Below are positions 1-28,988 of a DNA stretch of 64,000 nt, piece after piece. Made by a program: the position numbers and the translations under genes. The stretch's first letter is position 1; every line of letters starts with the position of its first letter. The DNA is taken from positions 23,994,001 through 24,058,000 of the forward strand of contig NC_047062.1 in assembly GCF_902459465.1 (NCBI RefSeq), read 5' to 3'. The stretch is from Asterias rubens. Taxonomy: Eukaryota. The notes under the pieces were generated by a model, which was not told the origin of the DNA, did no database searches, and saw only the letters and a list, made by a program, of their open reading frames with translations.

Positions 1-78
1 GAATGCTAACACACCTCCAATCAAATAGTAAACTACACAATTAATAAGACAACTAATGGACACCGGTGTCACTATTGC

Positions 79-298
79 GGTGATCGTGGTCGAGCGTTCA
101 AGTGCGATGGACTCAAGCTCTGGTGTTTCTGGTCAGCCGGGTGTGGGTACAAGTCCTAATCATGACATTTGTATCTTTAAGTAAGACACTTAACCAGTAT
201 TGATTCTTCCTTCGGGATTGGACTTCGAGTCGTTGCTCCCGTGTGTTGTGTAGTAATGCATGCAAAAAGAACCCAGTACACATATCGTTAAGAGAAGG
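79..298 (+). mobile_element. tRNA-derived SINE (degenerate); second copy at ~2343-2561
   Basis: A-box-like tggtcgagcg and decayed B-box gggtacaagtcc, followed by a CORE-like segment (aagtaagacacttaacc) and a body ending aagaacccag...agagaagg. Confidence 0.7.
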
Positions 299-1550
299 TT
301 ATTGGCAATGGTGCCAAGTTTGCCGCAGCAACTTGTAAACTCTTACTAAATGCACTGGACACTATTGGTAATTACTCAAAATGATTGTTAGCATATCTGA
401 TTAATACTCTGATAGTTTTTTTTATTGTTAGCCAAAGTCTGCAGAAAAAAAAGGAAACAAAAGTCCAGTAAAAAAATCAAGGAATGTCTTGAACAAACTT
501 TGTTTGTAAATATTTATGCTAAGAAAAATGAACATATTAAATGTTGCTTGTTTCACAATGAAGTTTCACAATGAAGTTTAAAGGAGCTACACAAATCAGC
601 CTCATAAAATCACAAATCACTTCGGGCCCGGACCCTTAGGCGGGCTCGGACTCTAAGGCAGGCCCAGACCACAGGCCATTAAAGGCTTCGCGTCCCCCTG
701 AAGAGCGGGCTTCATCTTTAGTAGATGTGCCACACCCACCAACCATCCCCCACCCTCCCCTAAAACTTTTTTTCTTGATCCACCCTTGATGAAGCTGGTG
801 ATGATGGGGATAAAATGCCGTCTGAGCATTATAATGCAGAAACAATATGGATATTACGAAGCTACAGTTTTTTTCTTTTTTTAGGTACATTAACCATGAG
901 AGCAAAAATAGGTGCATCAAAGCTCGAAATAGGCATTAAATTCAAACATCTGAGAGGGGGGCACACCACCCCTCAGACTCCCTAGATTACACCTGAGCAT
1001 CTACGGCCTAAACATTTCCTAGGGCATAATGCGGGCCCTGGACCCCTAGCCGTAAATGTTATGTCCCCCCATCTTTCAAGACGAATTGATCTCCTGGCCA
1101 CCCAAAAAAGTTCGCCATTTCTTTTAACAAGCTAACTGCATGTCATGGATGACACGCTTGCTTACGCACGCACATACATGTACAGTAGACAGTTCCATCA
1201 AGTTGATTTCACGTGTACCAACACACACACACGCACACGCACAGCCCCGAAAAAAAAGAACGAAATCTATTAAATTATAACTCACATTTTGTACAACTCA
1301 CAACTATGACACTTTACAGAAGGCAGGAGCATTCTCTCCTCTTGCTATAGTAGATAAACTTCTACTGTGAAAAGTTTCAAATCCTACTTAATACCTACCT
1401 CATACAGCCAGATCTTTCCATACCAGCTTGAACAGTTTCTGATGAATACTCTGATAGTTTTTTTGATTGTTGGCCGAAGTCTGCACGAAAAAAGGAAACA
1501 AAAGCCAAGTAGTCAGGAACTCTTGAACAAACTTTGTTTGTAAATATTTA

Positions 1551-2029
1551 TTCCGGGTCAATTCAAATGACCCGGATTCCGGGTCAATTCAAATGACCCA
1601 GATTCAGGGTAAATTCAAATCACCCGGATTCCGGGTCAATGCAAATGACCCAGATTCCGGGTCAATTCAAATGACCCGGATTCCGGGTCAATTGAAATGA
1701 CCCGGATTCCGGGTCAATTGAAATGACCCGGATTCCGGGTCAATGCAAATGACCCGGATTCCGGGTCAATGCAAATGACCTGGATTCCGGGTCGATTCAA
1801 ATGACCCGGATTCCGGTTCAATGCAAATGACCCGGATTCCGGGTCAATGCAAATGACCCGGATTCCGGGTCATTGCAAATGACCCGGATTCCGGGTCAAT
1901 GCAAATGACCCGGATTCCGGGTCAATGCAAATGACCCGGATTCCGGGTCAATTGCAAATGACCCGGATTCCGGGTCAATGCAAATGACCCGGATTCCGGG
2001 TCAATGCAAATGACCCGGATTCCGGGTCA
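1551..2029. repeat. Minisatellite, ~18 copies of a doubly palindromic 26-bp unit ccgggtca(attcaaa/atgcaaa/attgaaa)tgacccggatt
   Basis: Read directly. Each unit contains ccgggtca..tgacccgg, and adjacent units form tgacccgga-t-tccgggtca. Confidence 0.97.
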
Positions 2030-2235
2030 AAACATTTGAACATTCAAAAGGACCCAGCTTGTACCCAGCTAGATTCTGGGTGAACAAAATATCATGACCA
2101 GGACTTGCCCACACCTTGCTAACCAGAAACACCAGAGCTTGAGTCCGGTGCACTTGACCACTCGGCCACGATCGCCTCAAAAGTGACACTTGCGTCCATT
2201 AGTTGTCTTATTAATTGTGTAAGTTATTTTTTGAT
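2030..2235 (-). mobile_element. Inverted tRNA-SINE head plus flank, fused to the right end of the 26-bp array
   Basis: Reverse complement of ~4125-4330; the minus strand reads tggccgagtggtcaagtgcaccggactcaagctctggtg. Confidence 0.85.
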
Positions 2236-4124
2236 TTTCCTATTTTACTTTCCTACAAAAATCAGAATGCTAACACACCTCCAATCAAATAGTAAACTAC
2301 ACAATTAATAAGACAACTAATGGACACCGGTGTCACTATTGCGGTGATCGTGGTCGAGCGTTCAAGTGCGATGGACTCAAGCTCTGGTGTTTCTGGTCAG
2401 CCGGGTGTGGGTACAAGTCCTAATCATGACATTTGTATCTTTAAGTAAGACACTTAACCAGTATTGATTCTTCCTTCGGGATTGGACTTCGAGTCGTTGC
2501 TCCCGTGTGTTGTGTAGTAATGCATGCAAAAAGAACCCAGTACACATATCGTTAAGAGAAGGTTATTGGCAATGGTGCCAAGTTTGCCGCAGCAACTTGT
2601 AAACTCTTACTAAATGCACTGGACACTATTGGTAATTACTCAAAATGATTGTTAGCATATCTGATTAATACTCTGATAGTTTTTTTTATTGTTAGCCAAA
2701 GTCTTCAGAAAAAAAGGAAACAAAAGTCCAGTAAAAAAATCAAGGAATGTCTTGAACAAACTTTGTTTGTAAATATTTATGCTAAGAAAAATGAACATAT
2801 TAAATGTTGCTTGTTTCACAATGAAGTTTCACAATGAAGTTTAAAGGAGCTACACAAATCAGCCTCATAAAATCACAAATCACTTCGGGCCCGGACCCTT
2901 AGGCGGGCCCGGACTCTAAGGCAGGCCCAGACCACAGGCCATTAAAGGCTTCGCGTCCCCCTGAAGAGCAGGCTTCATCTTTAGTAGATGTGCCACACCC
3001 ACCAACCATCCCCCACCCTCCCCTAAAACTTTTTTTCTTGATCCACCCTTGATGAAGCTGGTGATGATGGGGATAAAATGCCGTCTGAGCATTATAATGC
3101 AGAAACAATATGGATATTACGAAGCTACAGTTTTTTTCTTTTTTTAGGTACATTAACCATGAGAGCAAAAATAGGTGCATCAAAGCTCGAAATAGGCATT
3201 AAATTCAAACATCTGAGAGGGGGGCACACCACCCCTCAGACTCCCTAGATTACACCAGAGCATCTACGGCCTAAACATTTTCCTAGGGCATAATGCGGGC
3301 CCTGGACCCCTAGCCGTAAATGTTATGTCCCCCCATCTTTCAAGACGAATTGATCTCCTGGCCACCCAAAAAAGTTCGCCATTTCTTTTAACAAGCTAAC
3401 TGCATGTCATGGATGACACGCTTGCTTACGCACGCACATACATGTACAGTAGACAGTTCCATCAAGTTGATTTCACGTGTACCAACACACACACACGCAC
3501 ACACACAGCCCCGAAAAAAAAGAACGAAATCTATTAAATTATAACTCACATTTTGTACAACTCACAACTATGACACTTTACAGAAGGCAGGAGCATTCTC
3601 TCCTCTTGCTATAGTAGATAAACTTCTACTGTGAAAAGTTTCAAATCCTACTTAATACCTACCTCATACAGCCAGATCTTTCCATACCAGCTTGAACAGT
3701 TTCTGATGAATACTCTGATAGTTTTTTTGATTGTTGGCCGAAGTCTGCACGAAAAAAGGAAACAAAAGCCAAGTAGTCAAGGAACTCTTGAACAAACTTT
3801 GTTTGTAAATATTTATGCAAGAAAAACGAACATACATGTATTTGAAGGTCAATATTTAACCTGGGCATTAGTAAATGTTAACTGTGATACCAAAAAAGTA
3901 AAAATATCAAACTCTCAAGATCGATAACACTAGGACACAAACCGACTCTCTGCCGATCAGAGACATCAAAATGGTGTCTTTTTACACGGTCGGAGCCTTG
4001 CTATAAAAGAACGTGTCGATTTTATCACACAGCCAGTACGACCCTGCATGTTTCAAAATGAAGTTTAAGACCTCTTCCCCACTCTTTTATTTTCCTAAAA
4101 AATCATTTTGCTGCCACAGCTTCC

Positions 4125-4528
4125 AATCAAATAATTAATTACACAATTAATCAGACAACTAATGGACGCAGGTGTCACTTTTGAGGCGATAGTGGCCGAG
4201 TGGTCAAGTGCACTGGACTCAAGCTATGGTGTTTCTGGTTAGCAAGGTGTGGGTACAAGTCCTGGTCATGACATTTTGTTGACCCGGAATCCAGGTGGGT
4301 ACATGGCAGGTCCTTTTGAATATTCAAATGTTTTGACCCGGATTCGTGTCAAAATGTTCTGACCCAGATTCCGGGTCAAGTAAAATGACCCGGAATCCGG
4401 GTCATTTGAAATGAACCGGATTCCGGGTCAAGTTAAATGACCCGGAATCCGGGTAAATTGAAATGAACCGGATTCCGGGTCAATGCAAATGACCCGGATT
4501 CTGAGTCAATTGAAATGAACCGGATTAA
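4125..4528 (+). repeat. tRNA-SINE head, ~60-bp linker, then degenerate 26-bp palindromic array
   Basis: A-box tggccgagtgg at ~4193 and gggtacaagtcc. The array runs ~4330-4528 and then resumes in the SINE 3' part (aagaacccagtac). Confidence 0.85.
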
Positions 4529-6918
4529 AGAACCCAGTACACATATCGTTAAGAGAAGGTTATTGGCAATGGTGCCAAGTTTGCCGCAGCAACTTGTAAA
4601 CTCTTACTAAATGCACTGGACACTATTGGTAATTACTCAAAATAATTGTTAGCATATCTGATGAATACTCTGATAGTTTTTTTTTATTGTTAGCCGAAGT
4701 CTGCAGAAAAAAGGAAACAAAAGTCCAGTAAAAAAATCAAGGAACGTCTTGAACAAACTTTGTTTGTAAATATTTATGCTAAGAAAAATGAACATATTAA
4801 ATGTTGCTTGTTTCACAATGAAGTTTCACAATGAAGTTTAAAGGAGCTACACAAATCAGCCTCATAAAATCACAAATCACTTCAAACACTTTAAAAATGG
4901 TCTCTCTTTGTTGAAGAACCTTGAGCAACTTTTTGGTTGATAGATAACTCCATAAGACTCTAGTGTTATTGTTATGATTACATTATTTAACCTTATTCTT
5001 AATCAAAACACGGAAAGTTGATGTTGGATTGTCTTACCATCTGGGAATGTTCCGCAAAGTCCTCCTTGTTTTCATCATCAGTGTCATCTAAAGCTTCACA
5101 TTCTCCATCATTCTGACAAGATCCACTGCAACCAAAAAATAAACAACATTGAACTATCAACTACCACAAGTGCATAACAATGACCTTGGTAGGTATATTG
5201 AAATGACCCTTGTTGAGCACCCTGCCTTGGTTGGATACTGTCACTGGACCTCGGGTTGTTCCAATAATAGTTTCCAGCCACAACCCGATGTCGCAGTCTC
5301 CGATGTCCGGCATGCTAAAAGCTCCGGATGACCAAATACAGCAGTATTACGTCATTCCATGACTGCGCACAGCAAGCGAAAGTGGTAGATTTTAGTAGAT
5401 TTTAGCTGTCATGGCGGTGTCAACAAGTAAATCGTATGATGAAAGAGTAGAGCGTCTACAACAGTATTGTTCAAAAGCATGCAACAACATAATCGAGTAT
5501 CAAGCATGAATTACAAAGAAGAAAGCCAAAGAGGGTTGTGCGTTGCCAGGTGAAAAAGGACTCATATCATAAAAAAAAGGATCTCGGATATTATTTGCAG
5601 CGGCAGTATATGAAGCACGGGAGACCAACACCCACAACGACAGGATGCTGAAATGTCCGGTGACGTCATCCGGAACTTTGAGCACAACAGACATCTACCA
5701 TGACACCGGTCATTACCATGCAGTAAAGGCTTGCTCCTTACACTTTTTCTGCCATGACCATGGCCCTTTCCATGGGCGCCAATCAGGGGGTTGGGGGGGG
5801 GGAGACACAGGGGGACATTGTCCCTGTCATCATTTGGAGGGTGGAGGACACAATATCAAATGTCCCCACCCCCCATCTTTTTGACCACCTTTATCATGAA
5901 GCCCAAGTTTTTACTAATGTAAGACCAAACCCTGTGTGCCCACCATGTGCATTAATCCAAGGGACAAAGGATGACACAACTTTTTAAAGGGTGGGGGACA
6001 CTATAGTCAAATGTCCCCCCTCATAATTGGCCCTAGATTGCATCACAGAGCAGCTAAAAAAAATGCAAAATTTCCTGGGCCCTTAATCTGGCCTGCACCC
6101 AGCGCCGTAAATGCTTCTCACACGCATACTCCATCGTTGACACCTCCCCCTTGAAAGAGTGGAAGGGACGTGTACCCCCACCCCATTTTCGAAGGGTGGG
6201 GGATACAATACCAAATGTTCCCCCTGTCTTTTGACCCCCATTATCATGATAGTCAGGTTTTGCACTATATGTAAAAAGGCCAAACCCTGTGCCCAAAACG
6301 CTGTGTCCCGTCAAATTGCCATCAATCCTGGGGGGGGGGGGGACACCACAATGTTCCCCAGTTTTGTTAACCCGTGTGTCGTATAAGAGCACGTAAGTTC
6401 GTGTCATCTCCATACCTTTTAGTTTTCTTGTAGTTACTGTATGTTTACTTTACGGTAACACGCTGTCTCTGTCTGTCATTGCCGTTCTGCGGCCTCTGTG
6501 GCTAGTGTGAGTGATATTGGTATAGTTTTACCCAGATAACTCCGCACGCAAGGCTGTTATTAACTCTGTTCCATTTGACACCACATTCAATTGAAACGTT
6601 TCTGAGTTCATTGTTTTCTTTTCCCGCAAACCTTGCGTACAACATTGCAACAATCCACTACACATTTTTATACCCATCTTTTTTATTTTGTTAATAATGA
6701 AAGTTCAAGTATTTCTAAAATCCAAAACTGGGCCTAAATTCTACTGCTCATGTTTTGAAGGCTTATTGTTCTGATTCTTTGGCATTGGGTCTCTAAATGG
6801 CCTAAGATTGTACCACAGAGCATCTAGAATGCCGTAAAGGCTTCACACTCGCGTGCTCATCACTCTTTGACAGATTTGCACCTGATGCTCAAAAGGTTCC
6901 ATGTAATAATAATAATAT

Positions 6919-7450
6919 GTGTGGGTACAAGTCCTGTTCATGACATTTCGTTGACCCGGAATCCAGGTGGGTACATGGCGGGTCCTTTTGATTGTTCAAA
7001 TTTTTGACCCGGATTCCGGGTCAAAATGTTTTGACCCGGATTCCAGGTCAATTCAAATGACCCGGATTCCGGGTCATTTGAAATGACCCGGATTCCGGGT
7101 CAAGTAAAATGACCCGGAATCCGGGAATCCGGGTCATTTGAAATGACCCGGATCCCGGGTCAAGTAAAATGACCCGGATTCCGGGTCAATTCAAATGACC
7201 CGGATTCCGGGTCAATTCAAATGACCCGGATTCCGGGTCATTTTACTTGACCCGGATTCATGGTCAAAACACTTTGACCCAGAATCTGGTCATTACATTT
7301 CATTGACCCGGAATCCGGGTCAAATCATTTTGACCCAGAATCCGGGTCAAAACATTTGATCATTGAAAAGGACCCAGCTTGTACCCACCTGGATTCTGGG
7401 TCAACGAAATGCCATGACCAGGACTTGTACCCACACCTTGCTTGCCAGCC
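6919..7450. mobile_element. Foldback-like structure: ~120-bp inverted arms (SINE B-box half plus linker) around a 26-bp palindromic array
   Basis: gtgtgggtacaagtcc...ggtccttttga at 6919-6992 is mirrored by aaaaggaccc...ggacttgtacccacac ending at 7436. The array switches orientation internally. Confidence 0.85.
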
Positions 7451-8011
7451 TATATAGACATTACCACATAAGTTCCTGTGGTATTTAATATTCCTGTGGT
7501 ATTTTGTGCGGTAAATCAAGGTACCACAGGAAATATCATTTTACAACAGCCACTGGATGGGGCCCCATCCAGCTAGAGGCAACAGTGATTGCAGCGATAT
7601 TAGTGATAGTGACAACATCAGGGAGGAGGTGGAGAACAAGATCACCCACTCGAAGTTCAACCTGGCTATATCAGTCTCATTATCGGACACGCTAGAGGCG
7701 TGAGTGCAAGACAAGTGTCAAGCGCATAACCAGCCCAGGCACACAACATAAGGGGCCACTTCTGGGACAAGATGCTAGGAAGACATGCACGCTACTGCAG
7801 AAAAAAAACAGATTGAAGCACAAGACTACCAGACGAGTGGTCAGACAATGTTTGTTCAAACTATGCCAAAAAGCAAGCTTTGAAGAGGTCAGTAAAAAAA
7901 AAAATATTATCAATATCTCAGGTACTCAGGGCTCAATTTAAGGACTCATTTAAAAAAGGAAATTAACCAAAATAGTAAAAAATAAATAAATTAAAGTTAT
8001 GTTCAGTTTAA

Positions 8012-8804
8012 AGGGATATATGCACTTTTTCCTAACAAAAAACACAATGTCAACAGATTTACATTAAATTTACACAGATTGAAGATAATGATAGTAGAAA
8101 GCTTCCCTTGAAATTTTACTTACTGAGGTGCTGTAGTTTTTGAGAAATGAGTAAAAGTAATAATTTTCGTCTCAGTTTTAGCATGTAAAAACGTATAAAC
8201 CAGAAATGCTATGGTTTTGGTATAATATCATTTATAACTGGTTAAAGCCATTAATACACTTTCGGTAAACAGTATTGTCCAAGTCCCACACTTCGTGTAT
8301 CACAACTTATATATAAAATAACAATCCTGTGGAAATTTAGGCTCAATCGGACATCGGAGTCGGGAGAAAATAACGGGAAAACCCACTCCTGTTTTCGCGC
8401 GTTTCGCCGTGTCATGACATGTGTTTATAACAAATCCGTAATTCTCGTTAACGAGAATTTATATTGTTTTACCGTTTTCTCAAAAAGTAAAGCATTTCAT
8501 GGACTAATATTTCAAGAGAAGTCTTTCACCATTACCTTCTGTAAACCCTGTAAATTATTTGTAAATCTGTGAACTTTTTTTTTTTTCCTGTACCGAAAGG
8601 GTCCAATGGCTTTAAGGGGATTTTACATGCTAAAATAGTTTTGGTCTCATGAGACCAAAACTATTGTGTGACTTGTTTTACTCATTTCTCAAAAACTACA
8701 CAACCTTAGTTATATTTGAAGGGAAGCTTTCCACTATCATATATCTTCAAACCCTGTAAGTTTAATGTAAATCCGTGGACATTTTGAAAAAGTACCCGAA
8801 TCCT
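8012..8804. mobile_element. Non-autonomous DNA transposon (TTAA target, AGG termini, Kolobok-type) carrying a nested MITE
   Basis: TTAA at 8008-8011 and 8805-8808, with long internal inverted arms. An uninterrupted relative lies at 60300-60725. Confidence 0.85.
8246..8611. mobile_element. Nested TTAA-flanked MITE (agccatt...aatggct); truncated relative at ~13443-13690
   Basis: TTAA is duplicated at 8242-8245 and 8612-8615. The host copy at 60.5 kb has a single TTAA at the same site (60515-60518). Confidence 0.88.
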
Positions 8805-11337
8805 TTAACCAGGCTTGAAAAGTTCAGTTAAAAAAACAAAAAAGTTCAGTTCACATGGCCTGGTCAGGCAAAAAAGTTCATAAATCATTGCCAATTTAAG
8901 CACTAATTTAAAAAAAAAAGGAAATAAAAAAAATAGTAAAAATAAATAAATGAAATGAAGTTCAGTTCAGTTCACATATCCTTGGTTCATATATCAAGAT
9001 TTGAAAAGTTAAGTTATAAAAGTTTAAAATAATTTAAATTTACATTTCCGTGGTTAGGCACTAGAGTTCTAATGCTAAGGTTTTAAGAGTTCAGCTGGTC
9101 AGGCACTACAATATAATAGGCTTATAAAATCTACCCCCCCCCCCAAATTTAAAACAAAAAGAAGTTCAGTTCACATTCCCTTTTTATGCATTCTCGACCA
9201 ATGTTTAACCTTGGAAGTGCCCCCTACATTGATGGCTGCTTGGTCACTGCAGCTCCCATTATAATTGCATATTATAATTATCATAATTGAGTTCAGAGTG
9301 TGGGACTTTCTTTGTGCTTTTTCTGAATTTCTACGAGTGCTGTATCCTGAGGAGATGCAGATAGTATTTGGTCAGCCATGTTTGTTTTCTGATACCATCA
9401 TCAAGTGAGTGAATGACTTCTAAATTCACAACCCTATTGTACAATGTACACTAACATTGATACTGTGCACTGTGGATATCGGTCCCATTGAGACAAGCCA
9501 CAACCCACATAAGGCCCTTGCTACATCTGGGAGGTCTTCTGAAGTATTTAGCCACAGCTAGAGTTAGATTCACATTAAATCTAGTTCTAATCTTGGTAAT
9601 GGTAGGGTTTAAAGTGAAGTCCAGTTCACTAGGCCTGCAATTTTTGAAGTTCAGTTCACACAAATAATAAAAAGAAGTTGTACATTTTCCTTGACAAGGT
9701 ACTAAAGTTCATAGCAGGTTTTAAGATTCATTTATTTAAACAAAAGTTCAGTTCACATATCCTGGTCAGGGACAAAAGTTCCGACATGTATCCGGGCTCA
9801 ATTTAAACACCCACTTAAAAAAAAGGAAATAAAAAAAAAATAAAAAAAAATAAGCAAGTAAAATTAAGTTCAGTTCAGTTCACATATCCTTGGTTCATAT
9901 AATTATTTATAAATTTACATTTCCTTGGTTCTAATGCTAAGGTTTTAAGAGTTCAGCTGGTCAGGCAAGACTTTTGGGCAAAGCTATTGGGCAAGACTAA
10001 AAAAAAAAATTAAACAAAAATAGCACAATGAAGATTTCTAGCTTGAACAATAGAGTATCTTGACAATCGCTTACTAAACAAAATACCTGTGTATTTGAAG
10101 ATTTCTTGCTTGAACATTGCTTTCTTGAACACTTGTCAATTGACATATCGCTCATTAGACAAATTATGAACTTGAAGATTTCTCGATTGAAGTTTAAAAC
10201 TTCCTTCTTGACAGACATATTGCTGATCATCATGAGACAAAATATCACACATATTTCTCCAAAAGATCATGTCTTAAGTATTTGAAGTTCATGTTCATTT
10301 CTAGCTTTCATGGGCCATGATCCAAGAATAAAATCGGCTTGATTTGAAGAAACACTATTCGCCATTGCTGAACGCACGCACGCACCCGGGCCCCTGTAGG
10401 CGCGTGGCTGAATGCATGCCGTGTGGTTGGCTCTCTCTCCCCGTCATGCTCGATCGTGTCGGCCTCCCCGGTCATGTCGTCCGTCCCTGTGCTCCCCTAC
10501 CGTACCTGGCCATGTATTCGAATGGCTCCATTAGCTACACTTTTCATCAGGCCATGACAGGCTAACTCGGTGGAATTCGCACAGACAAGAGTTCCACAAC
10601 GACGATGTAGAACTCTCAAAGCTCAACACAGTTGTCGCCCAACTTAGAACAATAAATTCCTTCCAATAAGTAGAATAACAGATGGCTCGAATACCTCCTG
10701 CGGTTACATAAAACATAGGTCCATCAAATTAGTCCAGCTGTCAGCTATAAAAGTTAATACAAACTCCGTGGAATTCGCACAGCCGTGAGTACGGTTCCAC
10801 ATTGAAGTTGGTCAGTTTTGTCCCTCTCTGGCCTCGTGTAAAACTCTCAAAGCCGGTTTGCCAATTAACACAGAATTTCGCCCAAATAATTATGAGCAAC
10901 AGCATAATTCCATAAAGTATGAACATGTCTCCTGGAAGGGTGGTACAACCATGGTACAACACGTGCGTTTAGAGCACAGCTGTAGCACATCCTCTTGTGT
11001 GGAGGACTTTTCTGAAAAATGGAAACCTCCAAAAAGTGAGCAATTCGACAAACCGCATAATTGCATAACAAAGGGGAATCTCTTCCGATACGCTGTGCAT
11101 AGAGCTATATAGCTCTATGGCTGTATGTCAAATTTCGATCTCAAGTGGAAAATATAAGCCCCGCCCAGCTTCTCACTATTGCTGTCACGTATTATATCTC
11201 ATTCACACAGCAAAACTTTGGCTTGGGGTCAAGTTTTCCTAATTTGCATACCAGAAAAACAAAATGTAAAGAAATGTGCAGGAATGTGCAGGCTTTGCAA
11301 AAGTCGTCCGTGATGTTGAATAGGGATTTGAGATATT

Positions 11338-11640
11338 AAATGGTGGACATCACTTGGTAACGAGTAATGGATAGCTAGTTGTTGATGTATTAAACATTGT
11401 TAGACTCCCTCTAACATAACATAGTTTTCGAGACAGAAGTAATTTTCCACGAATTTGATTTCGAGACTTCAGAATTAGATTTTGAGGTCTCGAATTGAAA
11501 GCAAACAACTTTGTATGACCATGGTGTGATCACAAGGATATTTCCCCATTATTATCTCGCAACGTGTGCATAGCCTCTGTTAGTTGAGATACACCAAGTG
11601 AGAAAACTGGTCTTTGACAATTACCAATAGTGCTACCAGT
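11338..11640. mobile_element. Degenerate copy of the abundant TTAA MITE (family A)
   Basis: Shares the internal core gtaattttccacgaatttgatttcgagac...gaggtctcgaa and the 3' end caattaccaatagtg. Confidence 0.75.
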
Positions 11641-12065
11641 AAAAAAATAAACTATTTGCATACCGGTACCGAATATTATTCATCAGCTCGTGTAATTTCG
11701 GCTGGCCCCAGAAATAAAATCTGATTATTTTATATGTTTTGTTTTTTAAACCCTGCTGATGACACTCGCTCTGCAGTCTGGTTGTAACAATCAATCAACA
11801 GAGGGCGCTATGCATAGTTAGCGGTCTCCAAATTCTTGGAAATTTCGACGATGCAATGGGGGTGTCATCATCGCGCAAATTTGTGTGTGTGTACACCTAT
11901 CCCAGGTCAAAATTCTTGGGTTTAACTGGTTTAACAGGATAGTGACCAAACTCGTCCTTTTTCAATATTAACCAACTGGTTTGGACTAGGTTTAACTGTG
12001 TTCAACTAGGTTTAAATTATAAACCAGTTGGTTTCTGTCCATTTTCGCAACTTCAACGACTAAGT

Positions 12066-13442
12066 TTAATGCATGATACACACGGCACGCGTTGAACATA
12101 GGATAAAAACAATTTTATTCATTCAAAAAAAAGCCCGGACTTATAAAACCTTCAGCTATACTCTTGATTCATTCTGAAACTAAAAATGCTAGGAAGACGG
12201 AGTTTGTACCTGAATCATCCTGGCATGTCCCTGCATACGAATTTCAAAGTTTTAGGGCGGCTTCCAAAGTTCTTGATACCGAAAAAGACAAGTACGCAGC
12301 TCTGCTCAGAGACAAACTCAATAAGCCTTCCTACGGGATTGTTGTGCACAGAGAACATCAAAAGTTAGACGGATAAATTTGACCCAAAATCATTGCTAAA
12401 TCTAATCAAGTTTAGCACCATTAGAAGGACATTTTTAAGGGCTTTTATCTCGTACTGACTTAGTGCTATGGTGATTTTCAAAGCGAGGCTAGATGCAAGG
12501 GAGTTGAACCGACACACCCCCAAATTTTAGGGCATTTAATGCATGATACACACGGCACGCATTGAACATTGGAGAAATACAATTTATTCATTGAAAAAAA
12601 AGCCCGGACTTATAAAAACCTTCAGCTATACTCTTGATTCATTCTGGAACTAAAAATGCTAGGAAGACGGAATTTGTACCTGAATCATCCTGGCATGTCC
12701 CTGAATACGAATTTCAAAGTTTTAGGGCGGCTTCCAGAGTTCTTGATACCGAAAATTAAAAGTAGGCGGCTGTGCTCCGAAACGAACTCAACCAGCCTCC
12801 CTACGGGATTTTTGTGCACAGAGAACATCAAAAGTACAACGGGTCAATTTCACCCAAAATCATTGCCCAATCTAAACAAGTTTAGCACCAATGGATGGAC
12901 AATTTCAAGGGCTTTCCTCTCGTACAAAAATTAGGGCTATGGGGATTTTCAAAGCGACGCTAGAGGCCAGGGAGTAGACCCGACACACCCCCATAAATTT
13001 GGGACATTTAATGCATGAAACACACGGCATGTGGTGATTATTGGAGAAAACAAATATATGCCTTGAAAAAAAAAGCCCGGACTTATAACAACTTTCAGCT
13101 ATGCTTTTGAATCATTCTGGAACTAAAAACGATAGAGAGACGCAGTTTGTACTTGCGTCATCCTGGCATGTCCCTGAATTCAAATTTCAAAGTTTTAGAG
13201 CGGCTTCCAGACTTCTTGATACCGAAAATTAAAAGTAGGCGGCTGTGCTCCGAAACGAACTCAACCAGCCTCCCTACGGGATTTTTGTGCACAGAGAATA
13301 TCAAAAGTACAACGGGTCAATTTCACCCAAAATCATTGCCCAATCTAAACAAGTTTAGCACCAATGGATGGACAATTTCAAGGGCTTTCCTCTCGTACAA
13401 AAATAAGTGCTATGGGGATTTTCAAAGCGACGCTAGAGGCCA
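12066..13442 (+). repeat. Three tandem copies of a ~470-bp unit
   Basis: ttaatgcatga.acacacggca begins units at ~12066, ~12536 and ~13008. The near-identical ORFs at 12186, 12656 and 13147 are copies of one another. Confidence 0.92.
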
Positions 13443-13710
13443 GGGGGAAAATAACAGGAAAACCCACCCTTGTTTCCTCACGTTTCGCCGTGTCATGACA
13501 TGTGTTTAAAATAAATCCGTAATTCTCGCTATCGAGAATTGATAGTGTTTTAATGTTTTCTCAAAAAGTAAAGCATTTCATGGAATAATATTTCAAGATA
13601 AGTCTTTCACCATTACCTTCTGTAAACCCTGTAAATTATTTGTAAATCTGTGAACTTAATTTGTTTTGTCTGTACCGAAAGTGTATAATAAATTAAATAT
13701 AGTTTTGGTT

Positions 13711-14075
13711 AGTGGACACTATTGGTAATTACTCAAAATAATTATTAGCATAAAACCTTTCTTGGTGACAAGTAATGGGGAGAGGTTGGTGGTATAAAAC
13801 ATTGTGAGAAACAGCTCCCTCTGAAGTGCCATAGTTTTGGAGAAAGAAGTAATTTTCCACGAATTTGATTTCGAGACCTCAAGTTTAGAACTTGAGGTCT
13901 CGAAATCAACCATCTAAACGCACACAACTTCGTGTGACAAGGGTGTTTTTTTCTTTCATTATTATCTTGCAACTTTGATGGTCGATTGAGCTCAAATTTT
14001 CACAGGTTTGTTATTTTATGCATAACTTGAGATACACCAATTGTCTTTTACAATTACCAATAGTGTCCACTGCCT
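13711..14075. mobile_element. MITE family A (TIR aggcagtggacactattggtaatt)
   Basis: Both TIRs are present, with TTAA after the right end (14076-14079). Confidence 0.9.
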
Positions 14076-14084
14076 TTAAACAGA

Positions 14085-15609: not shown

Positions 15610-15830
15610 TTTTGTTTTTTACCCATACACACCGACGTGTGTTAGCACTGTATACTCAGTACTTTCCCGAGTCCTGTGAAAAAAAAATCACATGCATGTT
15701 ACTCGGGTGGGATTCGAACCCTGGACCCTTGCAATTCTAGAGCAAGGTCTTACCAACTAGACTACCGAGGTTGCCCGGGAGCTTGAGGCAGTTCGAATCC
15801 TATGTTTTGGCAGCGGGTACCGCGATATAT
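15610..15830 (-). mobile_element. tRNA-derived SINE (family B)
   Basis: Minus strand: A-box tagtctagttgg, B-box ggttcgaatcc, A-rich tail. Copies at ~28700-28910(+) and ~54063-54300(+). Confidence 0.8.
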
Positions 15831-27558: not shown

Positions 27559-28988
27559 CGTAAATGAGGTTTGAGCGAGCTCACGCACCGTGAATTTTAC
27601 GCTGTGTGACAGCTATACCCCTTGTAATCAAATAATTTGAGGGTGAAAATAAATCAAATTTGCAGCTTCTTCAGGAGATTTTTATTGAAAATATTGGCAA
27701 CCATATCATTACAATGAGGGCATTGTAAAACCACACTTTCCGTGCCAAACACATGACATCCTGTGAACATTCTCGTGTAATTTCCTAGTTGGTGGACTGT
27801 TGGTTTTACCCATTACTGGCATTGTTCAGCCACGGGTAAGGTCTCATCTTACAAACTCAGGAATACTCTCAAGTGATTTCGAGAATTGAGGGTTTATTTA
27901 ACAAAAAATTGAGAGTAAATAGTAAACAGAAATACAAAGCAACCGCAGCTTAATCACCTTATAACAGTAACCATGTCTTCTTAACGCACGTTTATATGCA
28001 GTACGCCGTGTTTGTTTACATTTTACCCACTATAGGTCACGTGAGGCACGGGGCGCAATCGGTCTATTGATTATGACCATGAAAACACCAGTTTTTTAAG
28101 CACCAACCCCCATAGCACAAAAACATAAAGCAACCGCAGCTTAATCACCTTTTAACAGTAACCATGTCTACGCACGTTTATATGCAGTACGCCGTGTTTG
28201 TTTACATTTTACCCACTATTGGTCACCTGAGGCACGGGCGCAATCGGTCTATTGATTATGACCATGAAAACACCAGTTTTTAAGCACCAACACATTAGCG
28301 CAGTGCGTTAAGGGTGCTGGGACTGTCTCAGTAACTCGGATCATCCGGTCCGGGTTCGAATACCGTCTGTCTCTAATATAGATTCAAGGCTTTTTGCTGC
28401 CCCTGATGGGACAGTGTGATTGGGATCTGCCTTGTTTTCTCCCCTAAAGGGACAGGGCCCGCGCAGTGGCTAGGGTTCGAGGCAGGGGGGGATGTGCTCT
28501 GGGTCGGATGCAAGTCCTGAAGGGTCCTATATGGCAATGGGGAGGGGCCAGTGTGTGCCATTAACTGAACCGGCGCCTGAATGCCTGACACTTCCGGAGC
28601 GTAACCTTTTATGATTTTCCACCAGATTAAATTTACATTGTTTTAATAAATGGCTTTATTTGTTTATTTGTTTGTGTTCGAACATCTCTAATATATCGCG
28701 GTACCCGCTGCCAAAACATAGGATTCGAACTGCCTCCAGCTATACCGGGCAACCTCGGTAGTCTAGTTGGTAAGACTTTGCTCTAGAATTGCAAGGGTCC
28801 TGGGTTCGAATCCAAACCGAGTAATATGCATGTGATTTTTTTTTCAAAGGACTCGGGAAAGCACTGAGTATACAGTGCTAACACACATCGGTGTATGGGT
28901 TTTAAACAAAATCAATTTTCTCTTTATTTTTATTTATTTATTTATAGTCTAAGCTCCACAGTGTCAAAAAATGCTTTAAAACATTTTT
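27559..28988 (+). repeat. Right arm of the ~1.44-kb inverted repeat
   Basis: Reverse complement of 15526-16968; includes two ~185-bp internal tandem units and two tRNA-like heads. Confidence 0.95.

What the first reader, a model, noticed from the sequence alone, without database searches (positions are those of the whole stretch)
1551..7450. Palindromic 26-bp minisatellite repeatedly wrapped in tRNA-SINE arms (foldback-like structure)
Seen: three arrays of the same doubly palindromic 26-mer are each joined to the same SINE head and ~60-bp linker. The arm is on the right at 2030-2235, on the left at 4125-4330, and on both sides, inverted, at 6919-7450. At 4.3-4.5 kb the array sits where the SINE core lies in the intact SINE at 79-298. 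Inference: this is either a non-autonomous foldback element built from a Pol III SINE, or a local product of hairpin-driven template switching. Modular foldback elements with tandem repeats are known (sea urchin TU, Drosophila FB), but I do not know one whose arms are SINE heads.
Basis: partly seen in the sequence, partly recalled or inferred. Interest (0 to 1): 0.7.

Follow-up and report, generated by a model that had tools for sequence, protein, structure and literature searches.

The report
SINE-capped hairpin minisatellite in block repeats
A hairpin-forming 26-letter repeat flanked by pieces of one old SINE copy is real in this starfish genome. It has spread as part of larger duplicated DNA blocks, not as a jumping foldback element built from a SINE.

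Summary
Three arrays of a doubly palindromic 26-mer lie at 1550-2030, 4336-4526 and 7005-7360. A fourth lies just upstream of the window. Each array is joined to the same 65-bp linker and tRNA-Leu-like SINE head.

The transposon reading does not hold, for five reasons:
- Every full arm also carries 63 bp or more of non-SINE flank, so all arms are DNA copies of one SINE insertion site.
- Arms group by structural position (left, right, intact) and not by locus.
- Every double-armed copy examined lies in the same flanking sequence, and I found no target-site duplications.
- All 33 full arms have a run of four or more T between the head and the array, which should stop Pol III before the array.
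- The form in which the array replaces the SINE core is a 544-bp deletion derivative.

The conserved unit is a plus/minus/plus arrangement: flank+head, linker, array, inverted linker+head+flank, then flank plus intact SINE. It sits in tandem modules of 0.75-2.3 kb and in a roughly 12-kb composite repeated on at least nine contigs.

The same 26-mer also occurs between unrelated 42-bp-plus inverted caps at three loci. This favours palindrome-driven inverted duplication of whatever flank lies beside an array.

The scan noted two similar SINE-like and hairpin-minisatellite structures elsewhere in this genome; I did not test them. Interest is modest.

The parts
16..78 (+). 'pre': non-SINE flank upstream of the intact SINE. 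It is copied along with the head in every full arm.
   Evidence: Scattered SINE copies match only from query position 84 onward.
79..298 (+). Intact tRNA-Leu(CAA)-like SINE, class I. A second identical copy lies at 2343-2562.
   Evidence: about 2300 first-look candidates; scattered copies 78-81% identical over 84-298. (ARAGORN at relaxed threshold).
299..1549 (+). 'A body': non-coding remainder of the 2264-bp tandem unit. It includes a fragment of a very abundant MITE.
1550..2030 (.). 26-mer array 1, 18.5 units in uniform orientation.
2028..2236 (-). Right (R) arm: linker 2028-2090, head 2093-2176, pre 2177-2236.
   Evidence: (I16).
2241..2279 (+). Spacer between the inverted R arm and the next intact SINE. 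It is homologous to 4085-4121 ('preUp').
2280..2562 (+). Second copy of pre plus intact SINE, at the start of the second 2264-bp unit.
   Evidence: (D4, D6).
3815..4084 (+). 'Lflank': sequence that precedes the left arm at most loci.
4085..4335 (+). Left (L) arm: preUp 4085-4121, pre 4122-4184, head 4185-4270 (A box TGGCCGAGTGG, B box GGGTACAAGTCC), linker 4271-4335 with three T4 runs.
4336..4526 (.). 26-mer array 2, with units alternating in orientation (52-bp period).
4527..4559 (+). SINE 3' end (positions 266-298). The junction at 4526/4527 is a 544-bp deletion relative to the intact module on C1:21.44 Mb.
6919..7005 (+). Short left arm: head positions 63-86 plus linker. It resembles the L class.
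7005..7360 (.). 26-mer array 3. Unit orientation flips near 7240.
7348..7448 (-). Short right arm: linker plus head positions 51-86. It resembles the R class.
1..12063 (+). Composite, apparently non-coding repeat block that carries all of the above. It is collinear with blocks on C18, C10, C6, C57 and C12.

Best explanation
This is a low-copy, non-coding composite repeat built around a hairpin-forming 26-bp minisatellite. It is not a SINE-based transposon.

The 'SINE arms' are DNA-level copies of one genomic segment. That segment is about 100 bp of ordinary flank (preUp plus pre) followed by the first 92 bp of one old tRNA-Leu-like SINE insertion.

The ancestral module reads plus/minus/plus:
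- flank+head (L arm)
- 65-bp linker
- 26-mer array
- inverted linker
- inverted head+flank (R arm)
- flank plus intact SINE (I)

This is the layout left by an inverted triplication.

Shown:
- The module formed once, before it spread.
- It was then propagated only as part of larger DNA. That means tandem modules of about 0.75-1.1, 1.47 and 2.26 kb, and a roughly 12-kb block found on at least nine contigs.
- The window's three configurations differ from the intact module by a tandem duplication and two deletions.

Inferred:
- The quasi-palindromic array folds back on itself. This causes replication slippage (arrays of 1 to 38 units at equivalent positions), deletions that end inside arrays, and fold-back or template-switch copying of the neighbouring flank in inverted orientation.
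- Spread between chromosomes was by segmental duplication or ectopic recombination.
- Any Pol III transcript from an arm head would end in the linker, before the array.
For: Family extent and the non-SINE flank:
- The linker occurs at only 43 scored places in about 11 clusters on 9 contigs.
- True SINE copies match only positions 84-298, so 'pre' is not part of the SINE.

Arm classes:
- 16 L, 17 R and 13 I copies fall into position classes (L-L 95.7%, R-R 91.6%, I-I 94.8%).
- Between classes the figures are L-R 88.2%, L-I 85.0% and R-I 83.6%.
- In the tree the I clade has 100/100 support. The tandem-locus arms form a 98/97 subclade inside R.

Flanks and junctions:
- All six short double-armed copies share both flanks.
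- The L-array-R-spacer-I order recurs at eight or more places.
- Window 4040-4526 plus 4527-4692 equals L012 1295-1781 plus 2326-2491, which is a 544-bp deletion.

Tandem modules and the larger block:
- The tandem modules on C8, C14 and C1:21.19 Mb have one constant unit junction. There is a 1468-bp period on C10 and a 2264-bp period in the window.
- Window 1-12063 is collinear at 92-97% with blocks on C18, C10, C6 and C57.
- No Pfam domain is found in the ten ORFs of 73-120 aa tested in window 5645-13506.

Fold-back and Pol III:
- The 6919-7450 element folds as one hairpin, -243 kcal/mol, z = -37.6.
- All 33 full arms carry a run of four or more T between head and array.

A second, unrelated cap:
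- The same 26-mer lies between unrelated inverted caps of 42 bp or more at C1:19.7 Mb. Only 8 such termini exist, at 3 loci.
Against: - The mechanism (fold-back or template switching) is inferred from anatomy. No intermediate or polymorphic state was seen.
- The origin of the linker and of the 26-mer is unresolved.
- Spread of blocks to nine contigs could itself be due to an unrecognised large mobile element whose ends I did not find.
Several array loci (C12:5.80 and 8.55 Mb, C18:8.11-8.12 Mb, C7:19.87 Mb) were therefore not inspected and could hold copies with different flanks.
- The C2:9.288 Mb copy has an L-type arm in a different left context.
- Head segments are somewhat better conserved between L and R (89-91%) than pre or linker (82-83%). 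This might hint at constraint.
- Repbase and Dfam could not be queried.
Confidence: 0.7

Rival explanations
1. The 26-mer array with its linkers came from a pre-existing foldback or MITE-like element. The type on C1:19.7 Mb has inverted caps of 42 bp or more (about 60 bp counting the G/C and A runs) around 26-mer units. Such an element landed in, or next to, one SINE copy. Everything afterwards (the inverted copy of the head, tandem modules, block spread) was ordinary DNA duplication. This differs from the best explanation only in the origin of the array.
For: - L051 holds a 440-bp element with caps matching 41/42 over the aligned part, extending to CAGGGCCCC when compared with a second copy. 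Its inside is made of 26-mers, and it folds at -184.5 kcal/mol.
- Its unit variants (for example TCAAAACATTTTGA spacers) also occur next to the linkers.
Against: - Only 8 cap termini exist genome-wide, at 3 loci, and on C12 they are in tandem, same-strand order like the SINE-arm modules.
- No target-site duplication is visible.
- The cap sequence is absent from the SINE arms and shows no similarity to them.
- The caps may themselves be inverted copies of a flank rather than transposon ends.
Confidence: 0.18
2. A non-autonomous foldback transposon whose long inverted ends are SINE heads, moved in trans by an unidentified transposase.
For: - Inverted arms around tandem subrepeats, and full-length hairpin potential.
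- Copies on nine contigs.
- The short form has the same truncation points in all six copies.
Against: - All six short copies lie in identical flanks.
- Full arms continue outward into homologous non-SINE flank. The left and right outer ends are not equivalent: L has preUp and R does not.
- The arms at a locus are about 88% alike, while same-side arms across loci are 92-96% alike.
- No target-site duplication was seen.
- No coding partner was found in the block.
Confidence: 0.07
3. A SINE subfamily with an internal variable-number tandem repeat, comparable to SVA, spread by retroposition.
For: Window 4185-4559 reads SINE head, linker, array, SINE 3' end.
Against: - That form is a 544-bp deletion derivative found at only two places, with the same flanks.
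- All arms include upstream non-SINE flank.
- T4 runs in the linker would stop Pol III.
- The linker is not found outside the clusters.
Confidence: 0.03
4. An assembly artefact caused by palindromic reads.
For: Palindromic repeats are prone to chimeric reads and collapses (general knowledge).
Against: - The same junctions recur at many loci with 3-12% divergence.
- Contigs from other public runs, under three organism labels plus an RNA library, bridge the junctions.
Confidence: 0.02

Closest known systems
Foldback transposons that seed satellites (Drosophila FB; Tetris of D. virilis, PMC4079207; sea-urchin TU elements, from my own knowledge)
   Same: - Inverted arms enclose tandem subrepeats.
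- There is no coding capacity.
- Many rearranged forms exist.
- The subrepeats expand into longer arrays and tandem modules.
   Different: - Tetris copies have 8-10 bp target-site duplications and shared terminal domains.
- Here no target-site duplication was found, the outer ends of the two arms are not equivalent, and double-armed copies share their flanks.
- Arms cluster by side and not by copy.
- The arms are a SINE fragment plus host flank, not transposon termini.
SINE-derived satellites (squamate sSats, PMC10702118; limpet PcH-Sat from a Nin-SINE, PMC11121367)
   Same: Part of a SINE is incorporated into a tandemly repeated unit. Copy number is low and the arrays sit at a few chromosomal sites.
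   Different: Here the short repeating unit (the 26-mer) is not detectably SINE-derived. The SINE piece is a cap inside larger 0.75-2.3 kb modules, and it occurs in both orientations.
Inverted triplications (DUP-TRP/INV-DUP) and fold-back inversions made by replication template switching at inverted repeats (human genomic-disorder literature, from my own knowledge)
   Same: Three copies of one segment in plus/minus/plus order, with one junction lying in palindromic sequence.
   Different: Those events are recent and span kilobases to megabases. This one is about 200 bp, old (12-16% divergence between copies) and was later amplified. The mechanism here is inferred only.
SVA / LAVA composite retrotransposons (SINE-VNTR-SINE order, from my own knowledge)
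   Same: The linear order SINE part, VNTR, SINE part is seen at window 4185-4559.
   Different: There are no hallmarks of retroposition, and that order arises here from a deletion.

Membership tests
Foldback (FB-like) DNA transposon | Long inverted terminal repeats that contain tandem subrepeats and let the element fold back on itself | tested here: met
   Inverted arms flank the arrays. Window 6919-7450 folds as one hairpin at -243 kcal/mol, z = -37.6.
Foldback (FB-like) DNA transposon | Copies with the same termini in different, unrelated flanking sequence | tested here: not met
   All six short double-armed copies have the same left and right flanks. The full L-array-R modules always lie between Lflank and the intact SINE.
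Foldback (FB-like) DNA transposon | Target-site duplications at the ends (8-10 bp in Tetris, PMC4079207) | tested here: not met
   No direct repeat is seen at the ends of the short form, at the tandem-unit junctions or at the cap-type element.
Foldback (FB-like) DNA transposon | The two arms of one copy are each other's closest relatives | tested here: not met
   L-R 88.2% against L-L 95.7% and R-R 91.6%. The tree groups arms by side.
Foldback (FB-like) DNA transposon | An autonomous partner with a transposase that shares the termini | tested here: inconclusive
   No Pfam hit in the ten ORFs of 73-120 aa tested in window 5645-13506. The whole genome was not screened for a partner.
tRNA-derived SINE (retroposed copy) | tRNA-like head with Pol III A and B boxes | tested here: met
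   A box TGGCCGAGTGG is exact in 29 of 33 arms. B box GGGTACAAGTCC is exact in 15 of 16 L arms. ARAGORN calls tRNA-Leu(CAA) only at a relaxed threshold. Rfam gives no tRNA hit.
tRNA-derived SINE (retroposed copy) | The copy begins at the tRNA-like 5' end, with flanks differing between copies | tested here: not met
   Every full arm carries the same 60-100 bp of upstream sequence, which scattered SINE copies lack.
tRNA-derived SINE (retroposed copy) | The Pol III transcript can span the whole unit, with no internal terminator | tested here: not met
   A run of four or more T lies between head and array in 33 of 33 full arms. That such runs terminate Pol III is established knowledge.
TE-derived composite tandem repeat / macrosatellite | Head-to-tail units of hundreds to thousands of bp that contain TE fragments, joined at a constant junction | tested here: met
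   2264-bp units in the window. 1468-bp units on C10. 750-1130-bp arm+array units on C8, C14 and C1:21.19 Mb share one junction, array | reverse complement of window 1-30.
TE-derived composite tandem repeat / macrosatellite | The same units at several chromosomal sites, with array-length variation | tested here: met
   About 11 clusters on 9 contigs. Arrays of 1 to 38 cores lie at equivalent positions.

The most novel reading that the evidence does not exclude
Palindromic minisatellites in this starfish genome may repeatedly 'cap themselves'. Fold-back or template-switch synthesis at the array would copy whatever flank lies on one side, inverted, onto the other side. Here that flank is a SINE head plus host DNA. 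At C1:19.7 Mb and on C12 it is an unrelated sequence of 42 bp or more. Two other scan notes describe SINE-like inverted repeats around other hairpin minisatellites. If true, this would be a route by which foldback or MITE-like structures with terminal inverted repeats arise de novo from non-transposon DNA.
Probability: 0.2. Interest if true: 0.6.

Novelty: new variant of a known kind. Interest (0 to 1): 0.3.

Why it matters
The finding gives a worked example, in an echinoderm, of how a hairpin-forming minisatellite and a fragment of a dead SINE can be welded into a module that looks like a foldback transposon but behaves like a small satellite or segmental repeat. This matters for repeat annotation, because such modules would be mis-called as foldback elements, MITEs or SINE subfamilies. 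It also bears on how inverted-repeat structures and TE-derived satellites are born. It does not reveal a new mobile element, gene or regulatory system. Any functional role, such as a TFIIIC-bound barrier or a small-RNA source, is untested.

Tried and rejected
- Rfam at E<=1 on window 1-8000 gave only sub-threshold plant and animal miRNA-hairpin models on the arrays and no tRNA hit. These are structure-only artefacts of the palindromes.
- ARAGORN at default settings finds no tRNA in the heads. A relaxed threshold gives a degenerate tRNA-Leu(CAA). The two 'tRNA-Ser' calls at 15.7 and 28.8 kb are unrelated to the head.
- I tested whether the 26-mer derives from the SINE head. Local alignment is no better than shuffles (306 of 2000 shuffles score as well). 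The linker does contain a 9-bp copy of the B-box motif GTGGGTACA (40 of 2000), which is only suggestive.
- I looked by eye for target-site duplications at the short form, the tandem units and the cap-type element, and found none.
- No paralogue lacks only the 6919-7450 element. Some blocks lack the whole 5.3-8.65 kb segment, which is not informative as an empty site.
- Pfam found nothing in the ten ORFs tested in window 5645-13506.
- RNA evidence: the runs offered are Logan contigs only. A metatranscriptome holds low, even coverage across the region, which cannot be told apart from DNA carry-over. No strand, transcript ends or small RNAs can be read, so this is inconclusive.
- A centromere-repeat idea is not supported. 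The adjacent 470-bp satellite lies in many short arrays at several positions per chromosome.
- No paper in the library holds the core sequence. Searches of the echinoderm and starfish literature turned up no description of these repeats.
- Looking up earlier findings by sequence returned nothing.


Full report
**Context.** The window is G000:C1:23994001-24058000 of a 417.6-Mb, 150-contig animal assembly. Earlier scan notes call it a starfish, and one names Asterias rubens. I did not verify the species.

**1. The observation.**
- Tandem Repeats Finder reports a 26-bp array at 1550-2030 (18.5 copies, 94% matches), with further arrays at 4334-4526 and 7005-7359.
- The 19-nt core TGACCCGGAWTCCGGGTCA (up to 2 mismatches) gives 65 strand matches at about 40 sites, nearly all on both strands. 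All lie in these three arrays, and none is expected from shuffles.
- The unit is a chain of two overlapping palindromes: TGACCCGG-N3-CCGGGTCA and GGGTCATTT-N-AAATGACCC (read).
- The genome holds 695 exact cores against 0 for the reversed control.
- A fourth array with a right arm lies just upstream of the window, starting abruptly from unique DNA.
- Contigs from four other public runs bridge the key junctions, so this is not an assembly artefact.

**2. What the arm is.**
- A search with window 1-440 gives about 2300 first-look candidates. The scattered copies (78-81% identity) match only positions 84-298.
- Every full arm starts 63 bp further upstream ('pre'). The left-type arm shares a further ~39 bp ('preUp') with the intact copy.
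- The arm is therefore not a SINE head as such. It is a DNA copy of one particular SINE insertion together with its host flank.
- The head has an exact A box and a near-consensus B box. ARAGORN calls it tRNA-Leu(CAA)-like only at a relaxed threshold. Rfam gives no tRNA hit.

**3. Distribution.**
- The head-end, linker and first array bases (window 4247-4345) match 43 scored places in about 11 clusters on C1, C2, C6, C8, C10, C12, C14, C18 and C57.
- I fetched about 200 kb around these clusters.
- Window 1-12063 is a composite block, collinear at 92-97% with blocks on C18 (several, in both orientations), C10, C6 and C57. It lies next to a 470-bp satellite at window 12065-13445.
- That satellite is itself widely scattered in short arrays.
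- The ten ORFs of 73-120 aa tested in window 5645-13506 have no Pfam domain.

**4. No sign of independent insertion.**
- The six copies of the short double-armed form, which includes window 6919-7450, have the same truncation points (head 63-86 on one side, head 51-86 on the other). They also share the same flanks on both sides.
- On C8, C14 and C1:21.19 Mb, arm plus array is itself a head-to-tail unit of 750-1130 bp. All units share one junction: array | reverse complement of window 1-30.
- On C10, Lflank plus left arm plus array repeats every 1468 bp. In the window a 2264-bp unit repeats.
- I saw no target-site duplications.

**5. Arms group by position.**
- I found 16 left (L) arms, 17 right (R) arms and 13 intact (I) copies. 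One extra copy first typed as I is a truncated R arm.
- Within classes the copies are 95.7%, 91.6% and 94.8% alike.
- Between classes the figures are L-R 88.2%, L-I 85.0% and R-I 83.6%.
- The maximum-likelihood tree separates I with 100/100 support, resolves L and R largely apart, and places the tandem-locus arms as a 98/97 subclade of R.
- The L/R/I arrangement therefore predates the spread to different chromosomes. The two arms around an array are not each other's closest relatives.

**6. The conserved module and the window's variants.**
- At eight or more places the order is Lflank, preUp-pre-head (L, +), linker, array, linker', head'-pre' (R, -), preUp-pre-intact SINE (I, +).
- C1:21.44 Mb (L012) has the module intact.
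- Window 4040-4526 equals L012 1295-1781 (92%) and window 4527-4692 equals L012 2326-2491 (98.8%). The window therefore lacks 544 bp holding the rest of the array, the R arm, the spacer, pre, head and SINE core.
This form is seen at only two places.
- Likewise the junction at 1549/1550 removes Lflank plus the L arm relative to the second unit.

**7. Pol III.** All 33 full arms have a run of four or more T between head and array. The window's left arm has three. By established knowledge of Pol III termination, head-driven transcripts should stop in the linker, so convergent Pol III transcription through the array is unlikely. The short arms at 6919-7450 lack the A box altogether.

**8. Hairpin potential.** As single-stranded DNA, window 6919-7450 pairs end to end at -243 kcal/mol, against -81 +/- 4 for shuffles (z = -37.6).

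**9. A second context for the 26-mer.**
- At C1:19.706 Mb (L051) an array lies between inverted caps that are unrelated to the SINE arm. The caps match 41/42 over the aligned part and extend to CAGGGCCCC when compared with a second copy. The element folds at -184.5 kcal/mol.
- Only 8 such termini exist, at three loci. On C12 they stand in same-strand tandem order.
- This is either a rare foldback or MITE-like element that donated the array, or a second case of an array acquiring an inverted copy of its flank.

**10. Mechanism.**
- Shown: single origin of the arm-linker junction, the plus/minus/plus module, spread inside larger units, deletions ending in arrays, and array lengths from 1 to 38 cores at equivalent positions.
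- Inferred: the palindromic array promotes slippage, deletion and fold-back or template-switch copying of its flank. Blocks then spread by segmental duplication or ectopic exchange.
- The origin of the linker is open. It contains a 9-bp copy of the B-box motif (p about 0.02). The 26-mer shows no significant similarity to the head.

**11. Comparison and novelty.**
- The module fails the membership tests for a foldback transposon (flanks, target-site duplications, arm relatedness) and for a retroposed SINE.
- It behaves like TE-derived composite satellites (PMC10702118, PMC11121367) and like the foldback-to-satellite case Tetris (PMC4079207). It differs from them because the arms are a SINE fragment plus host flank.
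- No paper in the library holds the core sequence. Repbase and Dfam could not be queried.
- Two earlier scan notes (s1-180009, s1-150290) describe SINE-like inverted repeats around other hairpin minisatellites on other pieces of this genome. I did not test them. If they hold, the pattern is recurrent here.

**12. Limits.**
- RNA data were contigs only and are inconclusive.

**Verdict.** This is a real and unusual-looking structure, but an ordinary kind of repeat biology. Interest 0.3.

Noticed in passing
window 12065-13445: Three monomers of a ~470-bp satellite. The same satellite forms arrays of several kb up to about 18 kb next to the composite blocks on C10 and C18. It also forms many short arrays at several positions on C1, C5, C11, C13, C16, C19 and C143 (255 first-look candidates).
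   Followed up: partly
G000:C18:8880001-8990000 (L031-L041): Large mirror arrangement: satellite(-) then composite(-) at about 9-36 kb, and composite(+) then satellite(+) at about 58-87 kb of the fetched stretch. This is a palindrome-like structure of roughly 80 kb built from the same blocks as the window.
   Followed up: no
L051 1650-2092 and 2380-2925 (G000:C1:19706650-19707925): 26-mer arrays bounded by inverted caps of 42 bp or more (CAGGGCCCC..A-run..TGGCTCAGCATGACTTCATAGATAAAACAGATGACC) that are unrelated to the SINE arm. Only 8 termini exist genome-wide, on C1 and C12.
   Followed up: partly
window 4608-4656 (also 2611-2659 and 345-395); full copy at 13700-14080: Fragment of an extremely abundant ~370-bp MITE-like element with ends CAGTGGACACTATTGGTAATT. 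Contig depth in other runs jumps 100-1000-fold here, and many contigs run off into unrelated sequence at its edges.
   Followed up: no
window 5270-8650: This 3.4-kb segment, which contains the 6919-7450 element, is missing as a whole from the composite copies on C10 and at C18 ~8.942 Mb. The composite therefore has long and short forms.
   Followed up: no
window 15698-15771 (-) and 28752-28824 (+): ARAGORN calls two 'tRNA-Ser(AGA)' genes of 73-74 nt. They do not have the long variable arm expected of tRNA-Ser, and they lie in the 1.44-kb inverted repeats noted by another reader. They may be tRNA-like parts of another repeat.
   Followed up: no
L019 1290-1980 (G000:C2:9288330-9289020): An L-type arm plus a 14-unit array whose left side differs from all other L arms. 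Two 26-mer units and a MITE-like copy lie directly upstream instead of Lflank/preUp. This is the only arm found outside the usual context.
   Followed up: partly
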